Position numbers and translations under genes: made by a program. A stretch of DNA of 63,149 bases, filler included, from Octopus bimaculoides (Eukaryota): assembly GCF_001194135.2 (NCBI RefSeq). It is 6 parts of 5 records of this genome, joined end to end, with 100 filler letters (N's around TTAATTAATTAA, not from the genome) between each part and the next. Parts side by side here need not be neighbours in the genome. Positions count along the whole stretch, not along the records: positions 1 to 26,472 come from NC_068989.1; 5 more parts are not named here. The stretch is one strand, 5' to 3'. The notes under the pieces were generated by a model, which saw only the letters and a list, made by a program, of their open reading frames with translations, searched no databases and was not told the DNA's origin. Below, piece by piece: positions 3,629-26,472 of the stretch (position 1 is the stretch's first letter; each line of letters begins with the position of its first letter).

Positions 3629-5377
3629 TTTCGCCGCAAAGTAAATTACGATTTATCTCCCTTTATTTCAAGGGAGATAACTAAAAGCTCGGCTTGGAAC
3701 TGTTGCACTTTCAAAGAAATCTTTTTTTTCTTTTTCTTTGAAACGTTCTCAGCTAGTATTGTAGAAATATTTGAGGCGAAAGGGTGCCACTCTACCATTT
3801 CAAAGGTTGGCATTCTTATCTCTCTGGTGACAAGTTTTAGCCCTCAACGTCCATTTTGTTGCTATGTAGAAGTAATTTCTTTAGTTAATACATTGTCTGG
3901 CAACTGTGGTGGGATAAAAGTCATCCTTCCGTTCTGAAGTAATAATAATAATAATGAATTGTTGTATAAAGCTCAGACCCCTTATGTTATGGTTTACTCA
4001 AAAGAGAAAGGGTTACAGCCCATAACTTTTGACAGCATTTCTGAGACTTGGTTCCACAGCTCACAACAGAGCTGACTCTTCTAGAGTGACGTAGGTGTTA
4101 AATTTCAGGAATGAATTCAGTTCAACAAGAACAGTCCCTCCAACAGATTTACATTGTTTCTGTCGACCAAATTTCTCTCGTAAAACAAATGAATGAATGT
4201 ACCTTGTCTGACGTCATCACTCCTCCTATACCTTGTGCCTTATCCCTCCCCCCCCACTTCTGATCTATCCTCCTTCCTCACCTTTCCATACTGATATTTC
4301 CTCACACCACCACCCTTATTCATTACCCACTGCATTCACTCCTACCTCGATCCTTAACCATCTCTTACTCCTCCCCTCACACTCTTATGAAAGTACCCAC
4401 TCTCTCCTCTGCTCCCCACGTCCCACTCTCTGCCTCTCATCTCTTATGCACACTTTCTTGTACCCAGACACTTTGCTCTGGCATTCCCTCACTCCCATCT
4501 ACTTCCACTCCCCTCTATATATCAAGTGGAGAGTAGCCATGTCTCTCCTCTATAGTAGGAAGCCTATGCTTGTCCCTCTATCATACTTTAGCCTTTCAAC
4601 TGGCATAAAAAAAAACACCACCTCCCCCTCTCAAATACTTCACCCACCCATCCCCACTCAGTAGGAAGAGATTTTCTCTTGCAATTTACTTACCAACCTC
4701 ACTAGCGCCAGTGGCAAGAGAACACCCGTCCAGTAACACTTTGCAAAATGGTTGGTTTTTAAGGAAGGGCATCCAGACCGCCTTACTCACCATCGAAGGC
4801 ATTTTGTGTGTATGTGTTTGTCTGCACATGCGCAAAGGTGTGTATGTTTGTGTCTCCTTGTCTCGACATGTTAGTTAGGGTTAGTTGTGTGTAGCTAAGA
4901 GAGAAAACATGTTAAAAAGACGGGTCGGTTCCTCTCCAATTTTTTTGTAAATTCTTAAATATATCTCCTTCTCTGTATATATATACTACCAAACAAATAT
5001 GATTTTTATTGAACTCCTAATACTTTTTGTTCAATACTCTCTTGTAAACTGTTTTTAACATTTTCTTATTATTATCAAAGAATGTATATATGTATTTTAA
5101 TACTTTTGTGACAACCAGTACTTAGTACAACAAAGCTTTACATTTTACTTTTGACAATCTTTTTCTAAAAAAGTGAATAAACATCTTTAAAATTGCATTT
5201 TCAAACCATCTTTCATATATATTTCCACTCGTGCGGTATCTTACAACTTTACTTTCTTATAGATATATATATATATATAGTGCGTGTATAAACACAAACA
5301 TTTTTATGCAAACACACACGTGTATATAATTCATATAAATACAAACATATATATTTATATAACCACAAATCCCTTCA

Positions 5378-6740
5378 GGTAGAAACTCCATATGATGTAC
5401 CCAGTGTAAACTATGGACACATAAAAAGTGCAGCAATATCAAAGGAAGGTTAACTGAGAAAGTAGTTTTTGTGTGTGGTAGAAGAACAGGTGCAATATTC
5501 ACTGGAAATGTGCAGAAAACAACTTCTGCCACATTCCAGGGAGAAAAACTAGAAGTAGTTGATAGCTTCCATTACCTAGGTGACCAAGTCAGTAGTGGGG
5601 CAGGGTACACTGAAAGTGTAGCTGCTAGAATAAGAATAGCCTGGGCAAAGTTCAGAGAGCTCTTACCTCGGCTGGTGACAAAGGGTCTCTCGCTCAGAAT
5701 AAAAGGCAGACTGCATGACGCATGTGTACGAACAGCCATGCTACATGACAGTGAAACATGGGCCGTGACAGCTGAGGGCATGCGTAAGCTCGCAAGAAAT
5801 GAAGCTAGTATGCTCCAATGGATGTGTAATGTCAGCGTGCATACTCAACAGAGTGTAAGTACCTTGAGAGAAAAGTTGGACCTAAGAAGCATCAGATGTG
5901 GTGTGCAAGAGAGACAATTGCGCTGGTATGGTCATGTGACGAGAATGGATGAGGATAGCTGTGTGAAAAAGTGCCACACCCTAGCAGTTGAGGGAAACTG
6001 TGGAAGAGGTAGGCCCAGGAAGACCTGGGATGAGGTGGTGAGACATGACCTTCGAACATTGGGCCTCACCGAGGCAATGACTTCTGACCGAGACCTTTGG
6101 AAATATGCTATGCTTGAGAAGACCCGACAAGCCAAATGAGACCATAACCCGTGGCCTTTGCCAGGAGTGTAGTCAGCCCACTTATGTGTACCTTTCCTTC
6201 ATTTCACACTAAACTCTGCTTGCGAAGACCTGTTGAGGCAAGTGAAATCAAAATCAAATCAAATTTGCAAATTCAATGACTGGCACCCATGCCAGTGGAG
6301 CGCTAAGGGCACCGTCCAAACGTGACCGCTGCCAGAGCAGCTGACTGGCTTCCGTGCCCGTGGCACGTAAAAAGCACCATCCAAACGTGTTTGTTATCAG
6401 CATTGCCTTACTGGCACTTATGCCGGTGGCATGTGAGAAAACATTCGAGTGAGGTCGTTGCCAGTGCTACTGGACTGGCTCCTGTGCAGGTGGCACGCAA
6501 AAAACACCACTTGAGTGTGGTTGTTGCCAGTACCAGCTGAGTGGCCCTCGTGCCGGTGTCACGTAAAAAGCACCCACTACATTCTTGGAGTGGTTGGCAT
6601 TAGGAAGGGCATGCAGCTGTAGAAACTCTGCCAGATCAGATTGGAGCCTGGTTTAGCCATCTGGTTCACCAGTCCTCAGTCAAATCCTCCAACCGATGCC
6701 AGCATGGAAGGCGGACGCTAAACGATGATGATGATGATGA
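5378..6740 (+). mobile_element. 5'-truncated RTE-clade LINE: PHD-like Cys/His segment, RT C-terminus/thumb, 3' UTR with ~65-bp tandem units, (GAT)n tail
   Basis: Single frame 5378-6139 with one stop: CTQCKLWTHKKC...FHYLGD...RLRWYGHVTRM...GRGRPRKTWDEVV...DRDLWK. The 3' UTR is shared with other copies in the window. Confidence 0.9.
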
Positions 6741-7864
6741 TACCTGCATCTATATATACACATATAAGAACTGCATGAATTTACCAAAGCATTTAAAACA
6801 TTTCCATTTACCAAACTGAGGTGGAAGCCAGCAGAAGTCCTGTATAAAAAGAAACTATTACTTGACATGAAATTTCTGATGGATTCAATAGATCCAAATG
6901 TGCTTTCTTTTGGCAGAAATTGAAAAATAACCATTTATGGAGGACAAACCTTCTCTTGAGATAAACTTCAATACACACACACACACAAGAAAAAAGCCAA
7001 TTCTTTTTATTCTATGCAAGAAATTATCTTGGAAGAATGAAACACCAATTTATGAAGTTAGAGTTTTATTCTCAACGGAATTCACAGGGATGTTACAAAA
7101 AATAAGTTATCTTTGCTGAAACTCTACACAAAAATTATATATTTTTTACAAAAAATTTTGTAATTTTTTTTTTTCTTTTTTTAATATCAGCCAGTTTGGT
7201 CCTCACAACTTGTGTGATGCCAGAGAATACACAAAGAAAACCTTGAAGACACTACTTCTACTCTCAATGTTTGGATCATGACTGAGGGATTAATACAACC
7301 ATACTGTGTCATGACAGCCATTAATCCTGTAGAATGGACAAGACAGTGAAGTCTTCCATAAATGAGGAACAGAGATGTCAACTTCAATTCTTTACAAATC
7401 TCCAGAACCAAACTTAGCATCATGACCAAAACCACGAGTAAGAACTTCATAGACATATCATCCGTTATATCTGAAATCTATAAAAGTTAATTGAAACAAC
7501 ATTAATTCTTTCCACTCTGACACTCTTCTAACAGATTGTCCTTGGAGGAAATATTTTCTGGACATGAGAGCAGCTCATGGACATTCTAATCCCTTGATAT
7601 TAAGTTTCTTTCTCATAAGGCATTGTCTTATCTAGTTCAATGAAGTTAATGTCAAAAATGGTAAGAAAACCAGGAAAATCATTGGTGCAATTGTTGATTA
7701 ATATGGCAAGTTTCAGCTGCTACTGCGTTGTATGACAAGTTTAAATAAAAACCTTTTAATTCTGTTAGTCTTTCAAGAGTTTTACAGTTCTATATTTAAG
7801 AGATGAGGAATTATGTACATTATTTACATTTGACAGATATTTGTCCTCATCTTGTTTGTTGTTA

Positions 7865-7908
7865 ACACAACGTTTCGGCTGATATACCCTCCAGCCTTCA
7901 TCAGGTGT
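7865..7908 (-). ncRNA. Minimal type I hammerhead ribozyme fold
   Basis: ACAC-CUGAUGA-A-GGCUG(gagggtatat)CAGCC-GAAAC-GUU|GUGU. Intact core, 4-bp stem I, 5-bp stem II, palindromic ACGU stem III. Confidence 0.75.
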
Positions 7909-7997
7909 ATTGGGGAAAACTGACCTGAATAATAATAATAATAATAATATCGAAAAATACCTTAGGAACGAGAACCAAAGTTCGAAATTTCCCCAAG

Positions 7998-13005: not shown

Positions 13006-15923
13006 AGTTCACAACCTTCAATGCAAAGTGGGGTTACCTTGGTATAAGATCTAACATGCTTCAGAGTATATATATATAAATCTTGATTAAACATTTTTTA
13101 TTCCACTACTTTGTGAAAAATGAATTTTTTGTAGTTTGTTTATTATTTTGGATTCCTGAAAATGAGATTATTAAAATTGTGAAAAAGTAAAAGAAAAAAG
13201 AGAGGTAATAGTAAAGAAGAGAGAAAGATAAAGTGAGAGCAAGATAAAGGGCTTCTTTATAAAGTTTATTCCTTTGAATTACATTGATATAAAGAAACAC
13301 AGTTTTGAAATGTCATTTTTAAGAGTTAACTTCTAAATAATAAATGTAGAGAAACCAATATATTTGATCAGTGGCAGATAAATATGGGAGAATATTCCTC
13401 TCTGAAGATCGTAACAGATGAAGATGACAAGGAGGATTCCACTTGAAAAATTTCCAACCACAACAATCAAAACTAAAGAATATTTTTTAGTAACAGACCT
13501 TGAAAACTACCGTTCCAAATTGCAAAGTCAATGGATATGAAAAGGAACCAATGAACACTACCACCACCAATGACAGAGATAAGAGTTGTAGTAGTAGTAG
13601 TAGTAGTAGCCATAATAATAATAATGATAATTGTAGCAGTACTAATTGTTACAGTAATCAGAAAAGCATAAGGTTAAAAGCCAATAAGTTAAATAAAACA
13701 AACTTCATGAATGACATTTATAGAGAGGATGAAATATGAATGACAGTGAAAATGTTTGACAGCAACGAATAGGAAAAGAAACAACACAACAAAGAAAAAT
13801 ATTAAGAAAAAAAACAAAGGTGAGTTGTGTTTCTAAATAGATTTTTTTCTCTCTCTCTGATAAATTCTAATATTAATAATCAAAATACAAAGATGGTTAT
13901 ATGCTAATTACCTAGATGCTTAAAATGTAAGAAAAACATGAAAATTAGGGAGCAGAGTTTGGTGGACCACAAAGTGTGATAATCTTCCATAGAACGACTC
14001 TGGCTTCTCCAGCTGCACACAAAAATAACCATGGATATCACACAATTATTATACAATGTATAAGCATTAGCGTTATTAAGTGTACATCTCAGGCTCAGCT
14101 TATATATGTGTGTATGTTATATATATATATATGTGTGTGTGTATGTATGTATATATTGCATTTCTATGAATATATTCTACAATATGATATGGCTTAACAA
14201 CACATTATGATGACAAAACTATTCATGGATGCTCAGAACTTTTGACTTTATAGCCATTCCATTATCATTGGAATTTCTGATTAAATTTGTCTATACATAC
14301 ATACATACAGATACATACGCACACACACACACACACACACATATATATAAGTGTGTGCACATATATATATATATATATTGAAAACTTTAATGAACATTCT
14401 GAGCAAATTATTTCAGTTCTATAGCCTTAGATCAGAAAAAGATACACTTCAAAATAATGGAAATGAAAGCTAAAATGAAATTTGAGTGACAAGTAGATTC
14501 CTGTCACAAAACTGTGCAGACAATGTGACACAACAGAACTGATATCATTCTTGAGATGCACCAAATTCTCAATCAGGATTTTATTTGATATCTCTACAGA
14601 AACTCTTGAAATCTTGTCTGTTGCTTCCTAATCCCTAAGAATTGAAATCAAGAATTTTTACAAGGGCCCTACACTAATAAGGATATCAATAGAGAAAGTA
14701 AAGAATAAAGCTTCTCCACATTTCTCAAGTTATCTTCTGCTTGTTGTTATTGTGCATTTTTGCTAGCAAGCTGAATAAAATTTAACTTTACCATTCATTT
14801 TAATTATTTTCTGAATTTTAAACTGTGATAAATTTAGTGTGTGTGTGTGTATGTGTGTGTGTGTTTTATTAAGAAAAATAAGTAGAATCATTCTTTGCTG
14901 TCAGTGTTTTGAAGATTATGAAAGACAAAAGCAATTTTAACAAAAACTTCAAAACACATATGAACACATACAACAGTAAATCATCCAAAATACCAAACCA
15001 AAGTCTAGATTAATAATAGAAATGTTTTAAAATATTACTTTTAATTATGTAGCCATTAATGTCTATTAGATGTCTCAAGCATTTCGTTTGCTTTGTTGTT
15101 GTTTATTGTTAGAGTTGCTTATCTTTTTATAAATATTTCCAGGTTAGAAATAGATTTTTCAACTAATGTTAATTCTTATTCAAAAGGACCAATCAAATTT
15201 ACACATAAATACTCTAACTACAATTGTCATAATAATAATAATAACAACAATATTATTATTAATTATAATAATAAATGGCAAACAAAATAAAAATCAACAA
15301 TAATAATAGTGTTTATGGTGTTGATGATGATGAGGATGATGGTGATAAAGATGATTGCTGGGTTGAGCTGAAAAACAGGGAAGGACTGGATGGGACCAAG
15401 AACTAGTTATCAGTCATTGGTTTCTTTTAAGAATATTCAAAGAAGCACCGGATGGAGCCAAACATGAAAAGTGGAACTGAAATCTTCCAAAGTAGGGCTA
15501 ACTAAAGAGTAATTTGATACAAGAATACATGAGGAATAATAAAGAGATGAAGTCAGCTTGCTCTAAAGGTGATTAGAGATGGGGGTGTGGGGTGGAATCA
15601 CAACACAGTTACAGTTTTATATGTTATACAAAGCAAGCTGCTTAAAAGATATTGGGGGGAGAATGAATGCTGCAAGGTTACCAGTTGTCACCAAATAAAT
15701 AGGCTTAAAATACATTTTTGGAAAAACTAGAACAAAATGAGTTCCTTCTATCAGCAGTTATTGTTTCCACTTCATTTCAAATGAAAATTGAAATAAAATA
15801 AAATGCAAATTTAGAATTCTTTTTCTGCACCTGCAGTGTTTTTTAACTGAATTGTGGGATAGAACTAACTATATATATATGTATGTATATATTAATATAT
15901 ATATGTATGTATGTGTCTGTGTG

Positions 15924-15972
<49 letters not shown>

Positions 15973-16663
15973 TTTGCACACTAAGAAAACAAATTATTTA
16001 TAAAGGCAGGAAAAGAGCAAACACTGACGTGAATGCTCATAAGTAGCTGAGGAACAAAACTCAGCATCATTATGTTATTGAGTCTGCCAATTCAATAAGT
16101 TAGTATTGCCCTGTTTCTGATTGAGACCAAAAGGGCAAGGAGAGGAAAAAAAAACAAAACATTTTAAACAGAATAGAAGAATATTAATGTTTAAATATAT
16201 CAAATGATAAACAATCAACAGTAAACAACTATTTTCAAATGAACTCCAGCAAATTAGGTTTAAATTAAAAAAAATAAAACATGTAATCTTGACCAATCTT
16301 TTATGTCTGTGTGGGTTGTCTTCCCATTTGAAGAGAAACATTACAATGTTCCCCACTTATAATAACCAAACCTTTTCAGGAAAATGGCAAGGAATTTAAC
16401 AGGAATATTTGGGGAAAAAATAAATGGAAGTTCAGATAGAAATTAACCTTCCTTTCTCCGACACTAAAAATATCGTGATAAATCCCAAAATATCTTGTGT
16501 TTATGGCAAAATATGTAAAGAATTAAAGTAAAATTTAAAATCTCCTACACCCTGCCCACTATAAATGAACAGTAGAAATGGCATCAACTAGGGTGATGGC
16601 TCAGTGCAGAATGTAAGCAGTACAATATAACAAATAAACATATATCTGTATATACATACAGAA

Positions 16664-16698
<35 letters not shown>

Positions 16699-16939
16699 NN
16701 NNNNNNNNNNNNNNNNNNNNNNNNNNNNNNNNNNNNNNNNNNNNNNNNNNNNNNNNNNNNNNNNNNNNNNNNNNNNNNNNNNNNNNNNNNNNNNNNNNNN
16801 NNNNNNNNNNNNNNNNNNNNNNNNNNNNNNNNNNNNNNNNNNNNNNNNNNNNNNNNNNNNNNNNNNNNNNNNNNNNNNNNNNNNNNNNNNNNNNNNNNNN
16901 NNNNNNNNNNNNNNNNNNNNNNNNNNNNNNNNNNNNNNN

Positions 16940-17513: not shown

Positions 17514-18593
17514 TTAGTTATGACCTCTGCCAAAAAGCATGCTCTGTTGATTCGGCATCCCTCCGCTATTCAGTCTGTTTTGCGAGTAGTTTTGCACACC
17601 AAAGTTCTGCTGGTTTCCGCCGTAATAATTTGGTTGGTTGTCATTTCGTCCACCCATTCCACCACTACATCGAGAGGAAGGCCCACCTCCCATGCTACCA
17701 TTCATTACACCTACTGGATTTCGCATGAGACTGTTTACGGCATTTCCGCGCATTCCAATATTATTGCGGCAATTTGCATTACCCAGTAAACTAGGAAGTC
17801 CACTGGTTCCTCCACCTCCTCGGTTCATTCCATTACCACCGCCGCCACCTCCACCTCCGTTACCGCCACTCATCATGGACCTCCCTCTTATCTGTTGTCC
17901 CATTAATGGTGCTGCGGAATTCCCACGCATAGAGGAAACACCTCGAGGAAACCGGCCACGTCCTCCCTCAGTAAATGTGAAACCACCGTAATCGTTGGCA
18001 TAAAACTCTTCAAAATTGTGAGGATCGTAAGGTTCAATGACGCCTTTCGGAGGTGCAGCCTCCAGGAGCTGATAGATATGTCTTATACAGTCTGTGACCA
18101 CAGGTGGATGTCCAGACATCGCAACAACGCGATCTGTAGACTGGGGACAGCATAATGAGTAAATTTTGATATTGGCACCGGTTTTTTCGCGCAATTCTTT
18201 AACTTTAAAGCCAGCTCTGCCAATTATACAACCAGCTTGACTCTGATGAACCAAAATTCGCACTTCGCAATCAAAATCCTGACCGTTTTTGTATTGTTTA
18301 TATTCTTCCAATGAGGGAATGATATCCAACAAACATTCCAGGGCAGTTTCGAGGTCAGTACTGACGGTTAGGATTCTTTCCGGTCCCGAACAATCGGGGA
18401 CTGTGATATTTGCTTTGAAGTCGTTTCTTAGTCTTTTAATGTTGTTACCACCTTTGCCTATGATGGCACCGGCATTTTTACTCTGGAGTAAAACACGGAC
18501 ATCGATCCGTGTTTTACTTCCACGTGGTCTCTTCATAGCAGAGCAATCAACGTCTTCGAGAGGTCGTTTTGTCAGACCTTCTTTGTTTTCCAT
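17514..18593 (-). CDS. HNRNPK: hnRNP K-like protein, 359 aa, single-exon CDS: N-terminal KRP NLS-like motif, KH1, KH2, then G/N/M/Q-rich low-complexity tail; no KH3
   Basis: KRPLED...KRPR; VRVLLQSKNAGAIIGKGGNNIKRLR...PDCSGPERIL (KH1); DFDCEVRILVHQSQAGCIIGRAGFKVKELRE...CCPQSTDRVV (KH2); PYDP...DYGGFT. All correspond to hnRNP K-specific segments. Confidence 0.93.
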   Translation of the reverse strand: MENKEGLTKRPLEDVDCSAMKRPRGSKTRIDVRVLLQSKNAGAIIGKGGNNIKRLRNDFKANITVPDCSGPERILTVSTDLETALECLLDIIPSLEEYKQYKNGQDFDCEVRILVHQSQAGCIIGRAGFKVKELREKTGANIKIYSLCCPQSTDRVVAMSGHPPVVTDCIRHIYQLLEAAPPKGVIEPYDPHNFEEFYANDYGGFTFTEGGRGRFPRGVSSMRGNSAAPLMGQQIRGRSMMSGGNGGGGGGGGNGMNRGGGGTSGLPSLLGNANCRNNIGMRGNAVNSLMRNPVGVMNGSMGGGPSSRCSGGMGGRNDNQPNYYGGNQQNFGVQNYSQNRLNSGGMPNQQSMLFGRGHN

Positions 18594-19129
18594 ATCTCCA
18601 ACACAAAAAATTATATATCCAAGTTACCGCTGACAACGGAGTGTAATATTTTGAGGGTTGCTGATTAATAACAATTTAAGGAAATATGATATAGGACAAA
18701 GAAAAAAAAAACAAAATAAAGCAAAGCAATTTAAATAAAATATTTGACTCTGGGAAGAAATAGTAACTGTTGAAATCGGTTGAGGGGGAGAGGAAGTAAA
18801 AATGTAAAAATATGTATTGTGATAAAGTGATGTGGTTGTTATTTGAAATAAAGCAGTAAAGTTAAAGAGATGTAGGAGCGGAAGGTGTGTTCCTTCTTCT
18901 TTGATTATTGGTTTTCAAAATAATTACACAGAAATTAAAACAAAATAGAGTCTTGGTAGTGGGGTAAAATAGTGAAAGAGGAATTAGTTTTTTGAATTTT
19001 CAAAACACGTTATCTGTAAAAAGTGAATGCAGAATTGTCAGAAATAGACGTTTAAATTTGTTTGGTATAACAGGATTATTTTGAAGGTTCATAAATAACG
19101 TGACGCGTGATTAAAGACGCCAGAAATAC

Positions 19130-19215
19130 CTGTAAGTCAGTTGACAACGGCAGCAATAAACAGAAAAAGCGAATCTGTCAACAAAAAAGCCAGGATTCGT
19201 TAAGATGGCCGCCAA
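19130..19215 (-). promoter_or_regulatory. Putative TSS and non-coding first exon of the hnRNP K-like gene, with YY1-like motif
   Basis: AAGATGGCCGCC at 19202-19213 in a CpG-containing patch. Candidate donor CAG|GTATTT at 19130/19129. Candidate acceptors at 18596 (ttttttgtgttggag, 2 nt before ATG) and ~18662. Boundaries uncertain. Confidence 0.45.
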
Positions 19216-19422
19216 ACAGGCAGCTTTTCTACCTCCAGTATTAGAGATGCTTATGTTACTCCCCACACGTTGACACCACCACAAGCTTGGCACAGCACAC
19301 AACCCTCTATGCTACACATAACATTGCACACAGCATTTAGATTAAACTTTAGGTTGCACACGTTTATATTACATACTTAATATTGCATACATTTATATAT
19401 TACAGACTTTACACTGCACATA

Positions 19423-21840: not shown

Positions 21841-22089
21841 AAAAAAAGGGTTAAAGAATTTTCTTTATCTTCTTTCCATTGGATTATTTACTCTTTGCCA
21901 AACCCACTTTATGGTGTGAATTGGATTTTCTACACCTGAGGATTTCCAGCTTTGGCCTGGAACCCGACTGTGTTGATAGCTCAGTATTTGGGTTGAGTGC
22001 TTCTCTGGAAATACCCCAACTTTACACCCTAGCAGGACCTTATATATATCTATATGAATATGAATATTCAATGCATTTTCTGTTTCATC

Positions 22090-22640
22090 TCCATCATGTA
22101 GCATCCGTTTTCCATGCTGACAATGGTTAGACAGTTTAACTGGGATAGGTAAGCTGGAGAGCTGTACCAGGATCCAATCTGCTTTGTCTTGATTTCCCCA
22201 GCTGGATGCCCACCACTCCAAGAGTGTAGTGGGTGTCTTTTACATGGCATCAACACTGGCCATGACTACGATTTCACTTGGCTCGATGCGTCTTTTCAAG
22301 CACAGCAAATTACTCAAGGTCACAATCACCTGTTCTCACCTTTGTGAGACCCTACATCAACAGATCATGCTTCACCATCTTGTCCCATGTCTTCCTGGGT
22401 CTACTTCTTCCACAGGTACCCACCACACTTGAAGATTGGCACTTCTTTACATAGTTATCCTCGTCCATATGCATCACATGACCACACCAGTGCAGTCGTC
22501 TCCCCTGCACACTGCATCTGATATCTCTCATGTCCAATTTTCATCTCATGATGCTTACACTCTGTCATACATAAAGAAACAGTGACAGCATGACAGCAAT
22601 GTCTGTTGCTACAAACATTGTATGCTGTCACACATACACT
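22090..22640 (-). mobile_element. RTE LINE 3' end (ORF end plus 3' UTR)
   Basis: RLHWCGHVMHMDED...GRSRPRKTWDKMVKHDL followed by the family 3' UTR. Confidence 0.8.
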
Positions 22641-23599: not shown

Positions 23600-23795
23600 A
23601 AAAGCACCTGTGCTGGTGCCTCATAAGAAGCACCCAGTCCTCACTCTGTAAAGTGGTTGGCATTAAGAAGGGGGTCTCCAGCCATAGAGACCATTCCAGT
23701 ACAGAAGATTGGAGCCTGGTGTAGCTCTTCAGCTTGCCAGCTTCTTGTGAAACTGTCCAACCCATGCCAGCATGGAAAAACGGACATCAAATGGG
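23600..23795 (+). mobile_element. RTE 3' UTR fragment
   Basis: Matches 6570-6720 in the same orientation. Confidence 0.65.
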
Positions 23796-25504
23796 TGAAT
23801 TGAGAAATTAGTGAATGAAGATTTACCATTGAGGAAAAATCAAGAAGCTTAGGTTGAGAGATATTTGGTGAAATCAAAGAAGCCATCATGGAACTTTCTC
23901 TGGAGGAGAAAAACTCTAGATATACTTTCTTTTGTATACATATTCCAATGTATTTCCAACTTAAAGCAATCTAAATCTCTAATGCAAGCTGCTGTGGTAG
24001 GTTGAAAGTTATCTTAAAGCTCACTCTCTGCTTCCTTGGACTTGATGACAAAATATTGAATGTCAAGAACAATAACATTCTGAAGAGGCATCGACACTTA
24101 AACAGCTGCCGGGAGGTCAATGCTAGATTCATTATTGGACGTGTGTCTCGAAGAGAGTGAATTTTAACTTGTTAATGTTTGTGTGTTAATATTGGCAAAG
24201 TTGTTGTTTTGGTACCACTGACTGGAGTTGATTTGGTAAAAGCAACAAGTTCTAAGGCTACTGGATCCAGTCAAAAACTACAGATTTAACACCCCATGAT
24301 GATGACTATACATTTGAAGGTAAGTGTGTAAAGCCATATTTATCTAATTATAATATTAGACTCATATGGCTTTATGCCAACAGAAGTAATATTAATCTGA
24401 ATAGCTCTCTCTCTCTATGCAAAGGGTTTGCACCCACTGAAGTCAGTAGATATCTATTTGAATAGTAAAAAGAAACCATGGCTTGGATCTAATGACAGAT
24501 TCAAATAATAATAATAACAATAATAATAATAATAATAATGTGTAGCACACACACACACGTTCTATTCATTCCCTTTCAGAACCAAGTTATGGGCTATACA
24601 TAAATACAAAAGGTAGTTGTTATGGTGCAAAGATGAAGATCATTGCGCTTAAACAAACCCATAATGATTAAAAGCATGATGAGAGGATAGTTGCCAGAGA
24701 AAGAGTAGTTTAAAAGACTCTACCCCCTTCATCTCGGTCTCCCCTCACCTTCACTCTCTTCCCCATACACCCACTCACACATCTCCCTCTTTCCCTCCCT
24801 GCCTCCTTCCCATATCCACACACACACACAACTGACTTGATAAACTGCCAAACCACCAGCCGTAGATGTCAGTAGTTCATATTCTGTTACAATTTTGCTG
24901 CTCTGTAGAAATGGTTGAAACAGAGAGAAATTCTCAACAGCTCAACCTCTATAAATAGGCACCTACACAGGGTAGGTGTATTTCAAAACTTTATGCTAGT
25001 TACAGAAATGGAAAATTGAAGAATATTTGGCTTGTGTGCAATGCTGTGTTCAATTCCTCTTGTCAATAAAAGTATTTTCTAGATTGACATTTCCTACACA
25101 TATTGCTTGAAGATGATTCTAATGGTTATAATGGATTATAGAACAAGTCTTCACTACCACACTGAACATAGGAAAATATCGAAAGGATTCTTCAAGAAAT
25201 TTTCTCAAAGCAAAAAAAAAAAAAACCTGTCAAAGCATTTTCTTTTCCCGGATGGTGGTCCAAGTCATGGCAGATGAATTTTCTTTATTTAATAAAAGAT
25301 AACAATTGTAGAATATGTAGATCTAATGATTGGTTGAATAACTTTTTTTGATTGAAACATGAGGGAATGCCTGGCGCCAAAAGTTCACAGAAGATTCTTT
25401 GATATCATCACAGAAGGAAACATCCAAGAAACGTAGTTTGTGGCAGTTCTGTAGGATCCTAAATAAAATATAATAATAATAATAATGATAACAATAGTAG
25501 TAGT

Positions 25505-25700
25505 AGTAGTAGTAGTTTCATTGAAATTGGAAAAAATGTGGCATCTCAAGTTTGTTACAATACCAGTGATTGTAGGATCACAAGGAATGGTCAAAAAAGA
25601 ACTGACCTATATACACAGTCTTCAGACACTTCCCAAATACCAAGGATGTCCAACTGCTCCAAATTACATCCATATTCAGCAAAATTTATCAAATCTTCAT
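25505..25700 (+). mobile_element. R4/Dong-like LINE 3' remnant
   Basis: KLEKMWHLKFVTIPVIVGSQGMVKK, homologous to 54900 and 59500-59560. Confidence 0.6.
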
Positions 25701-26079
25701 TACACACAGTCCTAAGGAGAGACAGAAACGATAGGCAAATAAACACATAATAATAAGCACAACAGAGGCAGACTCATTGAAGAATCTCTACTCTCGCCCC
25801 CCACCATCATCATTTCATGTCTGCTTCCCATGTTGGTGTCGGGTGAATGATTCATCATGGCCTGAGTTAGTTCTTGTTTAGATTTACTATCTTCCCACCC
25901 AAGTTAAAGATCATATCTCAACCATGTTTCATTTAGGGAATAGTTTCTATGACTGCCTGTGCTAATACCAACTATACAGAATACCGAAGGTGCATTTTAA
26001 TGTGGTACCAGTTCTAGAAAAGTTGTCAGATCCTCAATAAGCTTAAAGGGTCCTCCTGGGCGTACAATTTCTCCAGTTA

Positions 26080-26472
26080 TTCACCAAACACTTTATGACG
26101 GGCATCTATGTACCCCACAACATAGATTAGTAGTTAGCGACTTTGGGATCAAGGCAAAATGGGTGCCCAGAATTAGACAGGCTTGGAGAAGAAGGGTGTG
26201 GAAGCTTAAAGACCCTGCAAACGGACAGAGACTTAGAGACAAGTTACTTGAAGCATTTAACGAAATAGAAGGGGATATAGCATCATACAACGTGGAAGAC
26301 AATTGGAGATTTCTGCGGGACAATCTGTTGAAAGCCACCGACCAGATTTGTGGGTGGTGTAAGGTCCCCTCCCAACCCAGAGTAACGTGGTGGTGGAACA
26401 AGGAGGTAGACAGGGCTATTAGACAAAAGAAACAAGCTTGGAAGGACTGGAAGAACGGTGGTAGCAGGGAAT
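26080..26472 (+). mobile_element. RTE LINE fragment truncated by linker
   Basis: RRRVWKLKDP...LLKATDQICGWCK...TWWWNKEVDRAIRQKKQAWKDWK. Confidence 0.85.

What the first reader, a model, noticed from the sequence alone, without database searches (positions are those of the whole stretch)
17514..18593. hnRNP K paralog with KH3 and the Pro-rich KI region replaced by a G/N/M/Q prion-like tail
Seen: KH1 and KH2 are intact and carry hnRNP K-specific linkers, but after DYGGFT the ORF runs ~150 aa of GGNGGG / NAVNSLM / NQPNYYGGNQQNF and stops. I found no KH3 motif (VTIPKDLAGxIIGKGG) downstream on the minus strand. Known: canonical hnRNP K has three KH domains and, in vertebrates, a Pro-rich SH3-binding KI region; G/N/Q/Y-rich tails are typical of TDP-43 and hnRNP A/B proteins and drive phase separation. 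Inference: a two-KH, condensate-forming RNA-binding protein with a non-canonical architecture, interesting in a lineage known for extensive RNA-level regulation.
Basis: partly seen in the sequence, partly recalled or inferred. Interest (0 to 1): 0.78.

Follow-up and report, generated by a model that had tools for sequence, protein, structure and literature searches.

The report
Conserved KH3-less hnRNP K retrogene
This octopus gene is an old, intron-free copy of the RNA-binding protein hnRNP K that lacks the third RNA-binding domain and has been kept intact by selection in octopuses and cuttlefish; its glycine-rich tail is the ancestral inter-domain linker, not a newly acquired prion-like domain.

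Summary
Window 17514-18593 (-) is one uninterrupted 359-aa ORF in Octopus bimaculoides, with two intact type I KH domains and a disordered 153-aa G/N/S/R/M-rich tail. No KH3 lies in the window.

The tail is not a replacement. It matches the KH2-KH3 linker of canonical cephalopod hnRNP K in order and in length, and it stops a few codons after the MMFG motif that precedes KH3.

All 11 parental intron positions across the homologous region are absent, while the canonical cuttlefish gene is a multi-exon, 24-kb locus.

Intact single-exon orthologues with the same C-terminus occur in O. vulgaris, O. sinensis, another Octopus, Argonauta and three sepiids. Selection is purifying: dN/dS is 0.04 for the KH part and 0.12 for the tail.

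A non-coding first exon and its splice donor are conserved between octopods and sepiids. Sepia esculenta larval RNA-seq shows that 5'UTR intron spliced.

The protein is most likely a nuclear two-KH poly(C)-binding protein. The Q/N content is modest, so the prion-like label is weak. Condensate formation, expression in Octopus, and presence in squids and Nautilus are untested. Gene models exist, but I found no description of it as a retrogene.

The parts
17514..18593 (-). Complete single-exon CDS (359 aa plus TAA) of the KH3-less hnRNP K paralogue
   Evidence: The ORF is. It is identical to the annotated protein P0001 on O. bimaculoides CM046609.1. None of the 11 parental intron positions is present.
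18519..18569 (-). N-terminal basic bipartite motif KRPLEDVDCSAMKRPRG (aa 9-25), the position of the hnRNP K nuclear localisation signal
   Evidence: The motif aligns with KRPLE...MKRARG of canonical cephalopod hnRNP K. K9, R10 and R22 are nearly invariant in alignment A1. Its function as an NLS is inferred from my knowledge of human hnRNP K and was not tested.
18312..18506 (-). KH1 domain (aa 30-94), GXXG loop GKGG
   Evidence: Pfam KH_1/KH_2. AF2 models a beta-alpha-alpha-beta-beta-alpha fold with block pLDDT 84-91. G46, K47 and G49 are invariant.
18060..18269 (-). KH2 domain (aa 109-178), GXXG loop GRAG
   Evidence: Pfam KH_1 best stretch is aa 111-174. The AF2 fold is confident. Foldseek finds tandem KH matches, including PCBP2 KH1-KH2 (2jzx) at TM 0.78 normalised to the target.
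17517..17975 (-). Disordered low-complexity tail (aa 207-359), homologous to the canonical KH2-KH3 linker; it ends 4 codons after MLFG
   Evidence: Composition is. pLDDT is below 50. Colinearity is shown, by the tblastn HSP that runs through to G355, and by the shuffle tests. dN/dS is 0.10-0.12.
19130..19253 (-). Conserved block holding the putative core promoter and non-coding exon 1, ending at the donor ACAG|GTATTT (last exon base 19130); contains GGCGGCCATCTT at 19202-19213
   Evidence: Outside the CDS this is the only octopus-cuttlefish conservation beyond microsatellite matches. It is aligned and is also present in Argonauta. The homologous donor is used in a spliced Sepia esculenta RNA-seq contig. 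The transcription start site was not mapped. I call the motif YY1-like from memory only.
18750..19129 (-). Predicted 5'UTR intron; the donor is inferred by homology and the acceptor is uncertain
   Evidence: GT at 19129-19128 is conserved in all species compared. The best acceptor candidate is a polypyrimidine tract followed by CCCAG| at 18750, conserved in 4 Octopus species. The AG near 18662 is lost in one species. No octopus transcript was available.
16699..16939 (.). Assembly gap (N) inside a (TA)n microsatellite, downstream of the gene
   Evidence: In O. vulgaris and O. sinensis the same flanks are joined by TA repeats only.

Best explanation
The locus is an ancient functional retrogene of hnRNP K.

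Origin. A processed hnRNP K mRNA was reverse-transcribed and inserted at a new site in a cephalopod ancestor, before octopods and decapods (cuttlefish) split. It was probably the long isoform that includes the alternative linker exon. The copy ends, or was soon truncated, a few codons after the MMFG motif. It therefore keeps the N-terminal basic motif, KH1, KH2 and the whole KH2-KH3 linker, but has no KH3. It acquired, or landed beside, a promoter with a short non-coding first exon and a 5'UTR intron. These are still conserved.

What is shown:
- the gene lacks all parental introns;
- orthologues are conserved in sequence and architecture;
- both the KH part and the tail are under purifying selection;
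- the gene is transcribed and its 5'UTR intron is spliced in Sepia esculenta.

What is inferred:
- the protein is nuclear;
- its back-to-back KH1-KH2 tandem binds C-rich single-stranded RNA or DNA, with lower avidity or a different binding register than three-KH hnRNP K;
- the basic, G/N/M-rich disordered tail supports multivalent protein or RNA contacts;
- it acts either as a specialised poly(C) binder or as a modulator or competitor of canonical hnRNP K.
For: 1. Intron absence. The canonical Acanthosepion pharaonis HNRNPK gene spans 24 kb. It has 13 coding exons for P0003, plus an upstream MDLAKE exon. That places 11 intron positions in the region homologous to the paralogue. The paralogue CDS is uninterrupted in O. 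bimaculoides, O. vulgaris and O. sinensis, another Octopus, Argonauta, A. pharaonis and two further sepiids.

2. Separate loci. Parent and copy lie on different contigs or chromosomes.

3. Phylogeny. In an NJ tree of the KH1-KH2 region, the paralogue clade has 100% bootstrap support and the canonical cephalopod clade 100%. The two together have 95.5%, and each contains both octopods and sepiids.

4. Selection.
- O. bimaculoides against Argonauta: dS is about 0.63. dN/dS is 0.039 for the KH part (12 non-synonymous and 59 synonymous differences) and 0.115 for the tail.
- Octopus against sepiid: pN is 0.048 for the KH part and 0.19 for the tail, with synonymous sites saturated at pS about 0.8.

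5. Shared derived features. The orthologues share the same truncation point. They also share the exon-1 block TGGAGGTAG...GGCGGCCATCTTAAC...TTTGTTGAC...ACAG|GTATTT.

6. Expression. Contig L019 comes from S. esculenta larval RNA-seq run SRR23936169 (PMC10571815). It joins exon 1 to a site 53 nt upstream of the ATG across a 543-nt GT-AG intron. The exact protein is indexed in 74 blocks of the sequence collection.

7. Protein features. There are two confident KH folds packed like PCBP2 KH1-KH2, followed by a disordered tail. In human hnRNP K each KH domain is individually active on C-rich DNA (PMC9709238).
Against: - No poly(A) remnant or target-site duplication is recognisable, so the retroposition is inferred from intron absence alone.
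- The gene now has a 5'UTR intron, which must have been gained secondarily.
- How KH3 was lost is unresolved. MMFG lies inside a parental exon, not at an exon boundary. No relic of KH3 or of the parental 3' end follows it. No matching alternative terminal exon exists in the parental gene.
- No octopus transcript was found. The Octopus Logan contigs are colinear with the genome without a splice gap, so they give no transcript evidence.
- The sepiid RNA contigs also carry the unspliced intron and about 3.8 kb of colinear 3' sequence. The true 3' end of the mRNA is therefore undefined, and de Bruijn contigs need not represent single molecules.
- No squid or Nautilus orthologue appeared in the protein search.
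- Inclusion of the cassette exon is not statistically secure (z 0.8-2.0; shared 5-mer p 0.04-0.09).
- RNA binding, localisation and any condensate behaviour are untested.
Confidence: 0.8

Rival explanations
1. One reading: an hnRNP K paralogue in which KH3 and the Pro-rich KI region were replaced by a newly acquired G/N/M/Q prion-like domain that drives condensate formation.
For: KH3 is absent and the PPPPP motif is lost. N is enriched in octopods, at 14-17% against 6% in the canonical linker. Acidic residues are depleted, giving a net charge of +12 against +6 to +8. The tail is predicted to be disordered.
Against: The tail matches the canonical linker in length and is colinear with it. Its G, M and R richness is ancestral; the Haliotis linker is 38% G and 14% M. 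The Sepia orthologue has only 12% Q+N. The maximum is 24-25 Q/N per 80 aa, below the 30-per-80 cut-off as I recall it. No assay or PLAAC run was done.
Confidence: 0.08
2. Incomplete gene: KH3 exons exist further downstream, or in the assembly gap, and are reached by splicing from a weak internal donor.
For: GT dinucleotides exist near the 3' end of the ORF (TTG|GTGTGC, GAG|GTCATA). The octopus mRNA was not observed here.
Against: No KH3 lies within the window's 17.5 kb downstream. None lies within 10 kb either side in O. vulgaris, O. sinensis and Argonauta, or within 6 kb either side in A. pharaonis. The gap is only (TA)n in sister species. The octopus GAG|GT site reads AGGAGC in sepiids. S. 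esculenta RNA contigs run straight through the stop codon and stay colinear with the genome for about 3.8 kb. The stop region and C-terminus are conserved across coleoids.
Confidence: 0.03
3. Non-functional processed pseudogene of hnRNP K, like the four human HNRNPK processed pseudogenes.
For: The locus is intronless and 3'-truncated relative to the parent. The human HNRNPK retrocopies are reported to be non-functional (PMC11288931). No octopus transcript contig was found.
Against: The ORF is intact in eight loci that span the octopod-decapod split, although synonymous sites are saturated. dN/dS is 0.02-0.12. The promoter/exon-1 block is conserved. A spliced transcript exists in Sepia esculenta.
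Confidence: 0.02
4. DNA-level duplicate of hnRNP K that later lost all coding introns and its 3' exons, rather than a retrocopy.
For: The gene has a 5'UTR intron and a conserved promoter, which a fresh retrocopy would lack. No poly(A) tract or target-site duplication survives.
Against: This would need 11 independent, precise intron losses before the octopod-decapod split, while the parent kept its introns. The 5'UTR intron is not at a parental intron position: it lies 53 nt upstream of the ATG in Sepia, whereas the first parental coding intron follows codon 6.
Confidence: 0.06

Closest known systems
Canonical hnRNP K (the parent gene; cephalopod P0003/P0006, human HNRNPK)
   Same: The N-terminal basic motif, KH1 and KH2 are 66-71% identical over the aligned KH part. 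The G/M/R-rich linker has the same length and order. The paralogue groups with cephalopod hnRNP K in the tree.
   Different: There is no KH3. The poly-proline motif is lost, RGG triplets are fewer (1-2 against 3-6) and acidic residues are fewer. The CDS is a single exon, against 13 or more coding exons over 24 kb.
PCBP1 (hnRNP E1), the intronless retrogene derived from a PCBP2 mRNA in mammals
   Same: It belongs to the same poly(C)-binding KH protein group. It is a functional, conserved, expressed gene created by retrotransposition of a processed mRNA of a multi-exon paralogue (PMC5829739; PMC11288931).
   Different: PCBP1 keeps all three KH domains and remains 86% identical to PCBP2. The cephalopod retrogene has lost KH3 and its linker has diverged strongly (pN 0.37-0.47 against the parent). 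It comes from a different lineage and a different parent gene.
Human HNRNPK processed pseudogenes
   Same: They are retrocopies of hnRNP K mRNA.
   Different: They are reported as non-functional (PMC11288931 citing Leopoldino 2007). The cephalopod copy is under strong purifying selection and is transcribed.
RBMXL1, RBMXL2 and hnRNP G-T, retrogenes of RBMX (hnRNP G)
   Same: They are hnRNP-family retrogenes retained as functional genes, with their own expression patterns (PMC11288931).
   Different: They are RRM proteins and show no domain loss. The expression pattern of the cephalopod gene is unknown.

Membership tests
hnRNP K / poly(C)-binding protein family | Two N-terminal type I KH domains with intact GXXG loops | tested here: met
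   Pfam KH_1 twice; AF2 folds; tandem KH Foldseek matches; invariant GKGG and GRAG.
hnRNP K / poly(C)-binding protein family | Third, C-terminal KH domain (KH3) after a long linker | tested here: not met
   The ORF stops 4 codons after MLFG. No KH3 is found by tblastn in the window or in any orthologous locus, and the positive control works.
hnRNP K / poly(C)-binding protein family | Phylogenetic descent from hnRNP K rather than from PCBP1-4, Nova or IMP | tested here: met
   The best database hits are all hnRNP K. The paralogue clade is sister to canonical cephalopod hnRNP K with 95.5% bootstrap support.
hnRNP K / poly(C)-binding protein family | KI-type linker with RGG repeats and a proline-rich SH3-binding motif | tested here: not met
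   The linker is retained and colinear. However, PPPPP is lost and only 1-2 RGG triplets remain, against 3-6 in canonical cephalopod proteins.
hnRNP K / poly(C)-binding protein family | Binding of C-rich single-stranded RNA or DNA | not testable with these tools
   Inferred only from conserved KH1 and KH2, and from data on human hnRNP K domains (PMC9709238).
Functional retrogene (retroposed gene copy) | Lacks the introns of a multi-exon parent located elsewhere in the genome | tested here: met
   All 11 parental intron positions are absent. Parent and copy lie on different contigs or chromosomes.
Functional retrogene (retroposed gene copy) | Poly(A) remnant and flanking target-site duplications | tested here: inconclusive
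   No parental 3' sequence or poly(A) relic follows the truncation point. At this age, with synonymous sites saturated, such marks are not expected to survive.
Functional retrogene (retroposed gene copy) | Intact ORF maintained by purifying selection across species | tested here: met
   Eight intact orthologous ORFs. dN/dS is 0.02-0.04 for the KH part and 0.10-0.12 for the tail.
Functional retrogene (retroposed gene copy) | Transcription from its own promoter | tested here: met
   Met for Sepia esculenta, through a spliced RNA-seq contig, and supported by the conserved exon-1/promoter block. Not tested for Octopus, because no transcript contig was available.
Prion-like (Q/N-rich) domain | Strong Q/N enrichment (from memory, at least 30 Q/N in an 80-residue window) with few charged residues | tested here: not met
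   The maximum is 24-25 Q/N per 80 aa in octopods and 19 in Sepia. The tail carries 14 Arg. PLAAC itself was not run.

The most novel reading that the evidence does not exclude
The KH3-less hnRNP K retrogene is a cephalopod-lineage innovation with its own function. It could antagonise or partner canonical hnRNP K on C-rich RNA. It could also act as a basic, low-complexity scaffold in nuclear RNA granules. Either role would add a lineage-specific layer to post-transcriptional regulation in animals already known for unusual RNA-level regulation.
Probability: 0.15. Interest if true: 0.7.

Novelty: new variant of a known kind. Interest (0 to 1): 0.45.

Why it matters
Functional retrogenes that survive for hundreds of millions of years are uncommon. 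Ones that also change the domain architecture of a core RNA-binding protein are rarer still. The review I read reports the human hnRNP K processed pseudogenes as non-functional, and I know of no functional hnRNP K retrogene. The nearest precedent is PCBP1, which keeps all three KH domains.

A conserved two-KH hnRNP K in octopuses and cuttlefish amounts to a natural KH3 deletion. It could show what KH1-KH2 and the linker do without KH3. It is also a candidate lineage-specific regulator in cephalopods.

For annotation, such loci should not be labelled simply as hnRNP K, nor dismissed as truncated models. The A. pharaonis model for this gene is in fact mis-built.

Tried and rejected
1. Truncation by intron read-through or intronic polyadenylation of the parent. 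Rejected: MMFG lies inside the parental exon GGMGQQGMMFGMEQTTTTQVTIPKD, not at its end.

2. An alternative terminal exon of the parent that encodes RSHNQYSD or matches the paralogue's 3' region. None was found in the 24-kb parental gene.

3. A frameshifted relic of KH3 or of the parental 3'UTR after MMFG. Local alignments were no better than shuffles, apart from low-complexity matches, and no KH3-like peptide appears in any frame.

4. Octopus transcript evidence from Logan contigs. L006-L010 are colinear with the genome across the predicted intron, so they say nothing about splicing. The canonical octopus genomic locus could not be fetched; only mRNA contigs were returned. I therefore took intron positions from the cuttlefish parent.

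5. BLASTP of the tail alone against the canonical protein. With compositional adjustment only the first 33 residues are significant. Shuffle tests were needed to show colinearity of the rest. The cassette exon alone remains non-significant.

6. Rfam scan of the window: no hits.

7. Pfam on other long ORFs in the window: no hits.

Full report
**Where the window comes from.** The protein encoded at 17514-18593 (-) is identical to an annotated protein of Octopus bimaculoides. It lies on assembly GCA_001194135.2, chromosome record CM046609.1, near 0.93 Mb. On the same strand, upstream of the gene, the annotation places the 3' part of an F-box/LRR gene that ends near window position 25323.

**Observation check.**
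- The region is one uninterrupted ORF of 359 codons.
- Pfam finds two KH_1 domains (E 8.6e-26). The best solved relative by sequence is PCBP2 KH1-KH2 (2jzx, E 9e-23).
- An AlphaFold2 model built on a 29-sequence alignment gives two confident beta-alpha-alpha-beta-beta-alpha folds, at aa 30-94 and 109-178. Residues 1-26 and 203-359 have no confident structure.
- Foldseek matches the folded part to tandem KH di-domains of PCBP2, IMP1-3 and Nova-1.
- The GXXG loops sit in invariant alignment columns.
- After DYGGFT come 153 residues with G 27%, N 14%, S 10%, R 9%, M 8% and Q 6%.
- tblastn with complete canonical hnRNP K proteins finds nothing in window 1-26472 except this ORF. The KH3 segment matches only the paralogous KH1. 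The same query finds KH3 at E 1e-30 in the canonical cuttlefish locus.
- The N gap at 16699-16939 cannot hide an exon. In O. vulgaris and O. sinensis the identical flanks are joined by about 40 nt of TA repeat.

**What the tail is.** It is not a foreign or new domain.
- Canonical cephalopod hnRNP K carries a 152-154-aa G/M/R-rich linker between KH2 and KH3. This holds for O. bimaculoides P0006, O. vulgaris P0004 and Acanthosepion pharaonis P0003.
- The paralogue's tail is 153 aa and runs parallel to that linker. The shared landmarks, in order, are:
  - EGGRG.(L/F)PRG
  - PLM..QIRGR
  - GLPSL.G..RNN.G
  - MNGSMG
  - GG.QQNF
  - GGM.NQ..M(M/L)FG
- The tblastn HSP runs without a break from residue 1 to G355.
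- BLASTP with compositional adjustment supports only the first 33 tail residues (E 0.005 and 0.001).
- Shuffles that preserve composition give z about 10 for the whole tail and 4.5-5.7 for the remainder. None of 1000 shuffles reaches the observed score.
- The ORF ends 4 codons (octopods) or 8 codons (sepiids) after MMFG/MLFG. In the parent, MEQTTTTQVTIPKD and KH3 follow at that point.

Relative to the parental linker, the tail differs as follows:

| Feature | Paralogue tail | Canonical linker |
|---|---|---|
| Poly-proline motif | lost | PPPPP present |
| D+E residues | 2-3 | 7-8 |
| RGG triplets | 1-2 | 3-6 |
| Asn content | 14-17% (octopods), 7% (Sepia) | 6% |

Q+N is 20-23% in octopods and 12% in Sepia. 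The densest 80-residue window holds 24-25 Q/N, below the 30-per-80 rule as I remember it. The prion-like label is therefore weak, and any tendency to form condensates is untested.

**The gene is intronless; the parent is not.**
- I reconstructed the canonical A. pharaonis HNRNPK gene (locus L013, about 24 kb) exon by exon with GT-AG boundaries. It has 13 coding exons for P0003, plus an upstream exon MDLAKE|G.
- Eleven of its introns fall within the part homologous to the paralogue. None is present in the paralogue.
- The paralogue CDS is a single block in O. bimaculoides, O. vulgaris and O. sinensis, a fourth Octopus species, Argonauta hians, A. pharaonis and two other sepiids.
- Parent and copy lie on different contigs or chromosomes.
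- The simplest origin is retroposition of a processed mRNA.
- The tail length, and a GLPSL.G..RN match inside the alternatively spliced 61-codon linker exon, suggest that the long isoform was copied. This point is not statistically secure.

**Age and orthology.**
- An NJ tree of 177 KH1-KH2 columns with 200 bootstraps gives the paralogue clade 100% and the canonical cephalopod clade 100%.
- Their union, to the exclusion of other molluscs, has 95.5% support. Each clade contains both octopods and sepiids.
- The duplication therefore predates the octopod-decapod split. From memory that split is dated to roughly 250-300 Myr; I did not test the date.
- Single origin is reinforced by the shared truncation point and by a conserved non-coding block.
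- That block, about 65-125 nt upstream of a conserved donor ACAG|GTATTT, reads TGGAGGTAG ... GGCGGCCATCTTAAC ... TTTGTTGAC. From memory the central motif resembles a YY1 site.
- Beyond microsatellite matches, it is the only non-coding similarity left between octopus and cuttlefish around the gene.

**Selection.** All values are Nei-Gojobori estimates.

| Comparison | KH part | Tail | Synonymous sites |
|---|---|---|---|
| O. bimaculoides vs Argonauta | dN/dS 0.039 (12 N, 59 S differences) | dN/dS 0.115 (23.7 N, 43.3 S) | dS about 0.63 |
| Within Octopus | dN/dS 0.02-0.03 | dN/dS 0.10-0.11 | few differences |
| Paralogue, octopus vs sepiid | pN 0.048 | pN 0.19 | saturated, pS about 0.8 |
| Canonical gene, octopus vs sepiid | pN 0.065 | pN 0.055 | pS 0.47-0.64 |

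The KH part of the retrogene is thus at least as constrained as that of its parent. The tail evolves faster but is clearly constrained. Against the parent, tail pN is 0.37-0.47, so most of the tail's divergence is old.

**Expression.**
- Sepiid contigs that encode the exact protein P0125 are indexed in 74 blocks of the sequence collection.
- Two of the source runs, SRR23936169 and SRR19578114, are Sepia esculenta larval or juvenile RNA-seq runs.
- Contig L019 from SRR23936169 joins exon 1 (...CCAAAAACAG) directly to TTTGTGCAC..., 53 nt before the ATG. This removes a 543-nt GT-AG intron.
- Sister contigs from other runs begin with the same 30-mer and continue into the intron. That is the expected de Bruijn branch between spliced and unspliced forms.
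- These contigs run through the stop codon and stay colinear with the A. pharaonis genome for about 3.8 kb. They show no splice out of the ORF.
- They do not define the mRNA 3' end, and assembled contigs are not single molecules.
- For the octopus window the donor (last exon base 19130) is inferred by homology. The acceptor is uncertain: the best candidate is at 18750, and the AG near 18662 is not conserved.
- I could not obtain any octopus transcript.

**Likely mechanism.**
- Shown: the protein keeps the basic N-terminal motif, a KH1-KH2 tandem and a basic disordered tail. All of these are under selection.
- Inferred from knowledge of hnRNP K and the PCBPs: it is a nuclear protein that binds C-rich single-stranded nucleic acid through two KH domains.
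- Each KH domain of human hnRNP K is individually active on C-rich DNA (PMC9709238).
- Without KH3 it should bind with lower avidity or a different spacing preference. Without the poly-proline motif it should have lost SH3-type partners.
- It may act on its own targets, or it may compete or associate with canonical hnRNP K. These steps need experiments.

**Comparison with known cases.**
- The closest precedent is mammalian PCBP1, an intronless functional gene made by retrotransposition of a PCBP2 mRNA (PMC5829739; PMC11288931). PCBP1 keeps all three KH domains.
- Human HNRNPK has four processed pseudogenes, which are reported as non-functional.
- A full-text search found no paper that combines hnRNP K, cephalopods and retrogenes.
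- Gene models for this locus do exist in public annotations under hnRNP K names.
- The locus is descended from hnRNP K but fails the three-KH definition of the family.
- I therefore class it as a new variant of a known kind: a retrogene of an hnRNP with domain loss.

**Open points.**
- How KH3 was lost is unresolved. The candidates are a truncated template, internal priming, or a later mutation.
- The taxonomic range beyond octopods and sepiids is unknown. No squid or Nautilus sequence appeared in the search.
- Expression in Octopus and all biochemical properties remain untested.

Noticed in passing
window 5471-6139 (+) and 26163-26472 (+): Two ORF fragments carry motifs that I recall from non-LTR retrotransposon ORF2 proteins (...GRGRPRKTWDEVVRHDL......RVTWWWNKEVDRAIRQKK...). 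Neither has a Pfam hit. Copies of the first element recur in the O. vulgaris and O. sinensis loci.
   Followed up: partly
window about 25323-26472 (-): The public annotation places the 3' part of a 577-aa F-box/LRR (FBXL-type) gene on the same strand, upstream of the hnRNP K retrogene.
   Followed up: no
window 5377-6144, 6550-6766, 22041-22568, 23604-23791: An interspersed repeat family shows 70-86% identical copies within the window and in the orthologous Octopus loci.
   Followed up: no
L014 (A. pharaonis CAHIKZ030000677.1), gene model P0124 / CAE1232849.1: The deposited 401-aa model appears mis-built. It translates the non-coding exon 1 and an out-of-frame stretch of exon 2, then rejoins the true frame, so it loses the real N-terminus and part of KH1. 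The uninterrupted 375-aa ORF at 6794-7921 is the likely product.
   Followed up: yes
window about 17840-17870 (-), poly-Gly run in the tail: The length of the glycine run varies. The tail reads GGNGGGGGGGGNG in O. bimaculoides and has two more Gly in O. vulgaris and O. sinensis. Runs differ by 1-3 Gly among the otherwise identical sepiid proteins P0002 and P0125-P0127.
   Followed up: partly
window 17638-17991 (+): A 117-aa proline-rich ORF lies antisense to the tail. It is simply the reverse complement of the Gly-rich coding sequence, so it is almost certainly not a gene.
   Followed up: no
L001 and L005 (canonical Octopus hnRNP K mRNAs); L013 21156-21338: The canonical gene has an alternatively spliced 61-codon linker exon, present in P0006 and P0003 and skipped in P0004 and P0005. 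It also has a small DFST insertion after MDSKE in one O. bimaculoides isoform.
   Followed up: partly
window 13220-15974; L024 13660-17309: Non-coding blocks downstream of the gene keep 70-73% identity and the same order between O. bimaculoides and Argonauta hians. Their function is unknown. They could be 3'UTR or regulatory sequence.
   Followed up: no
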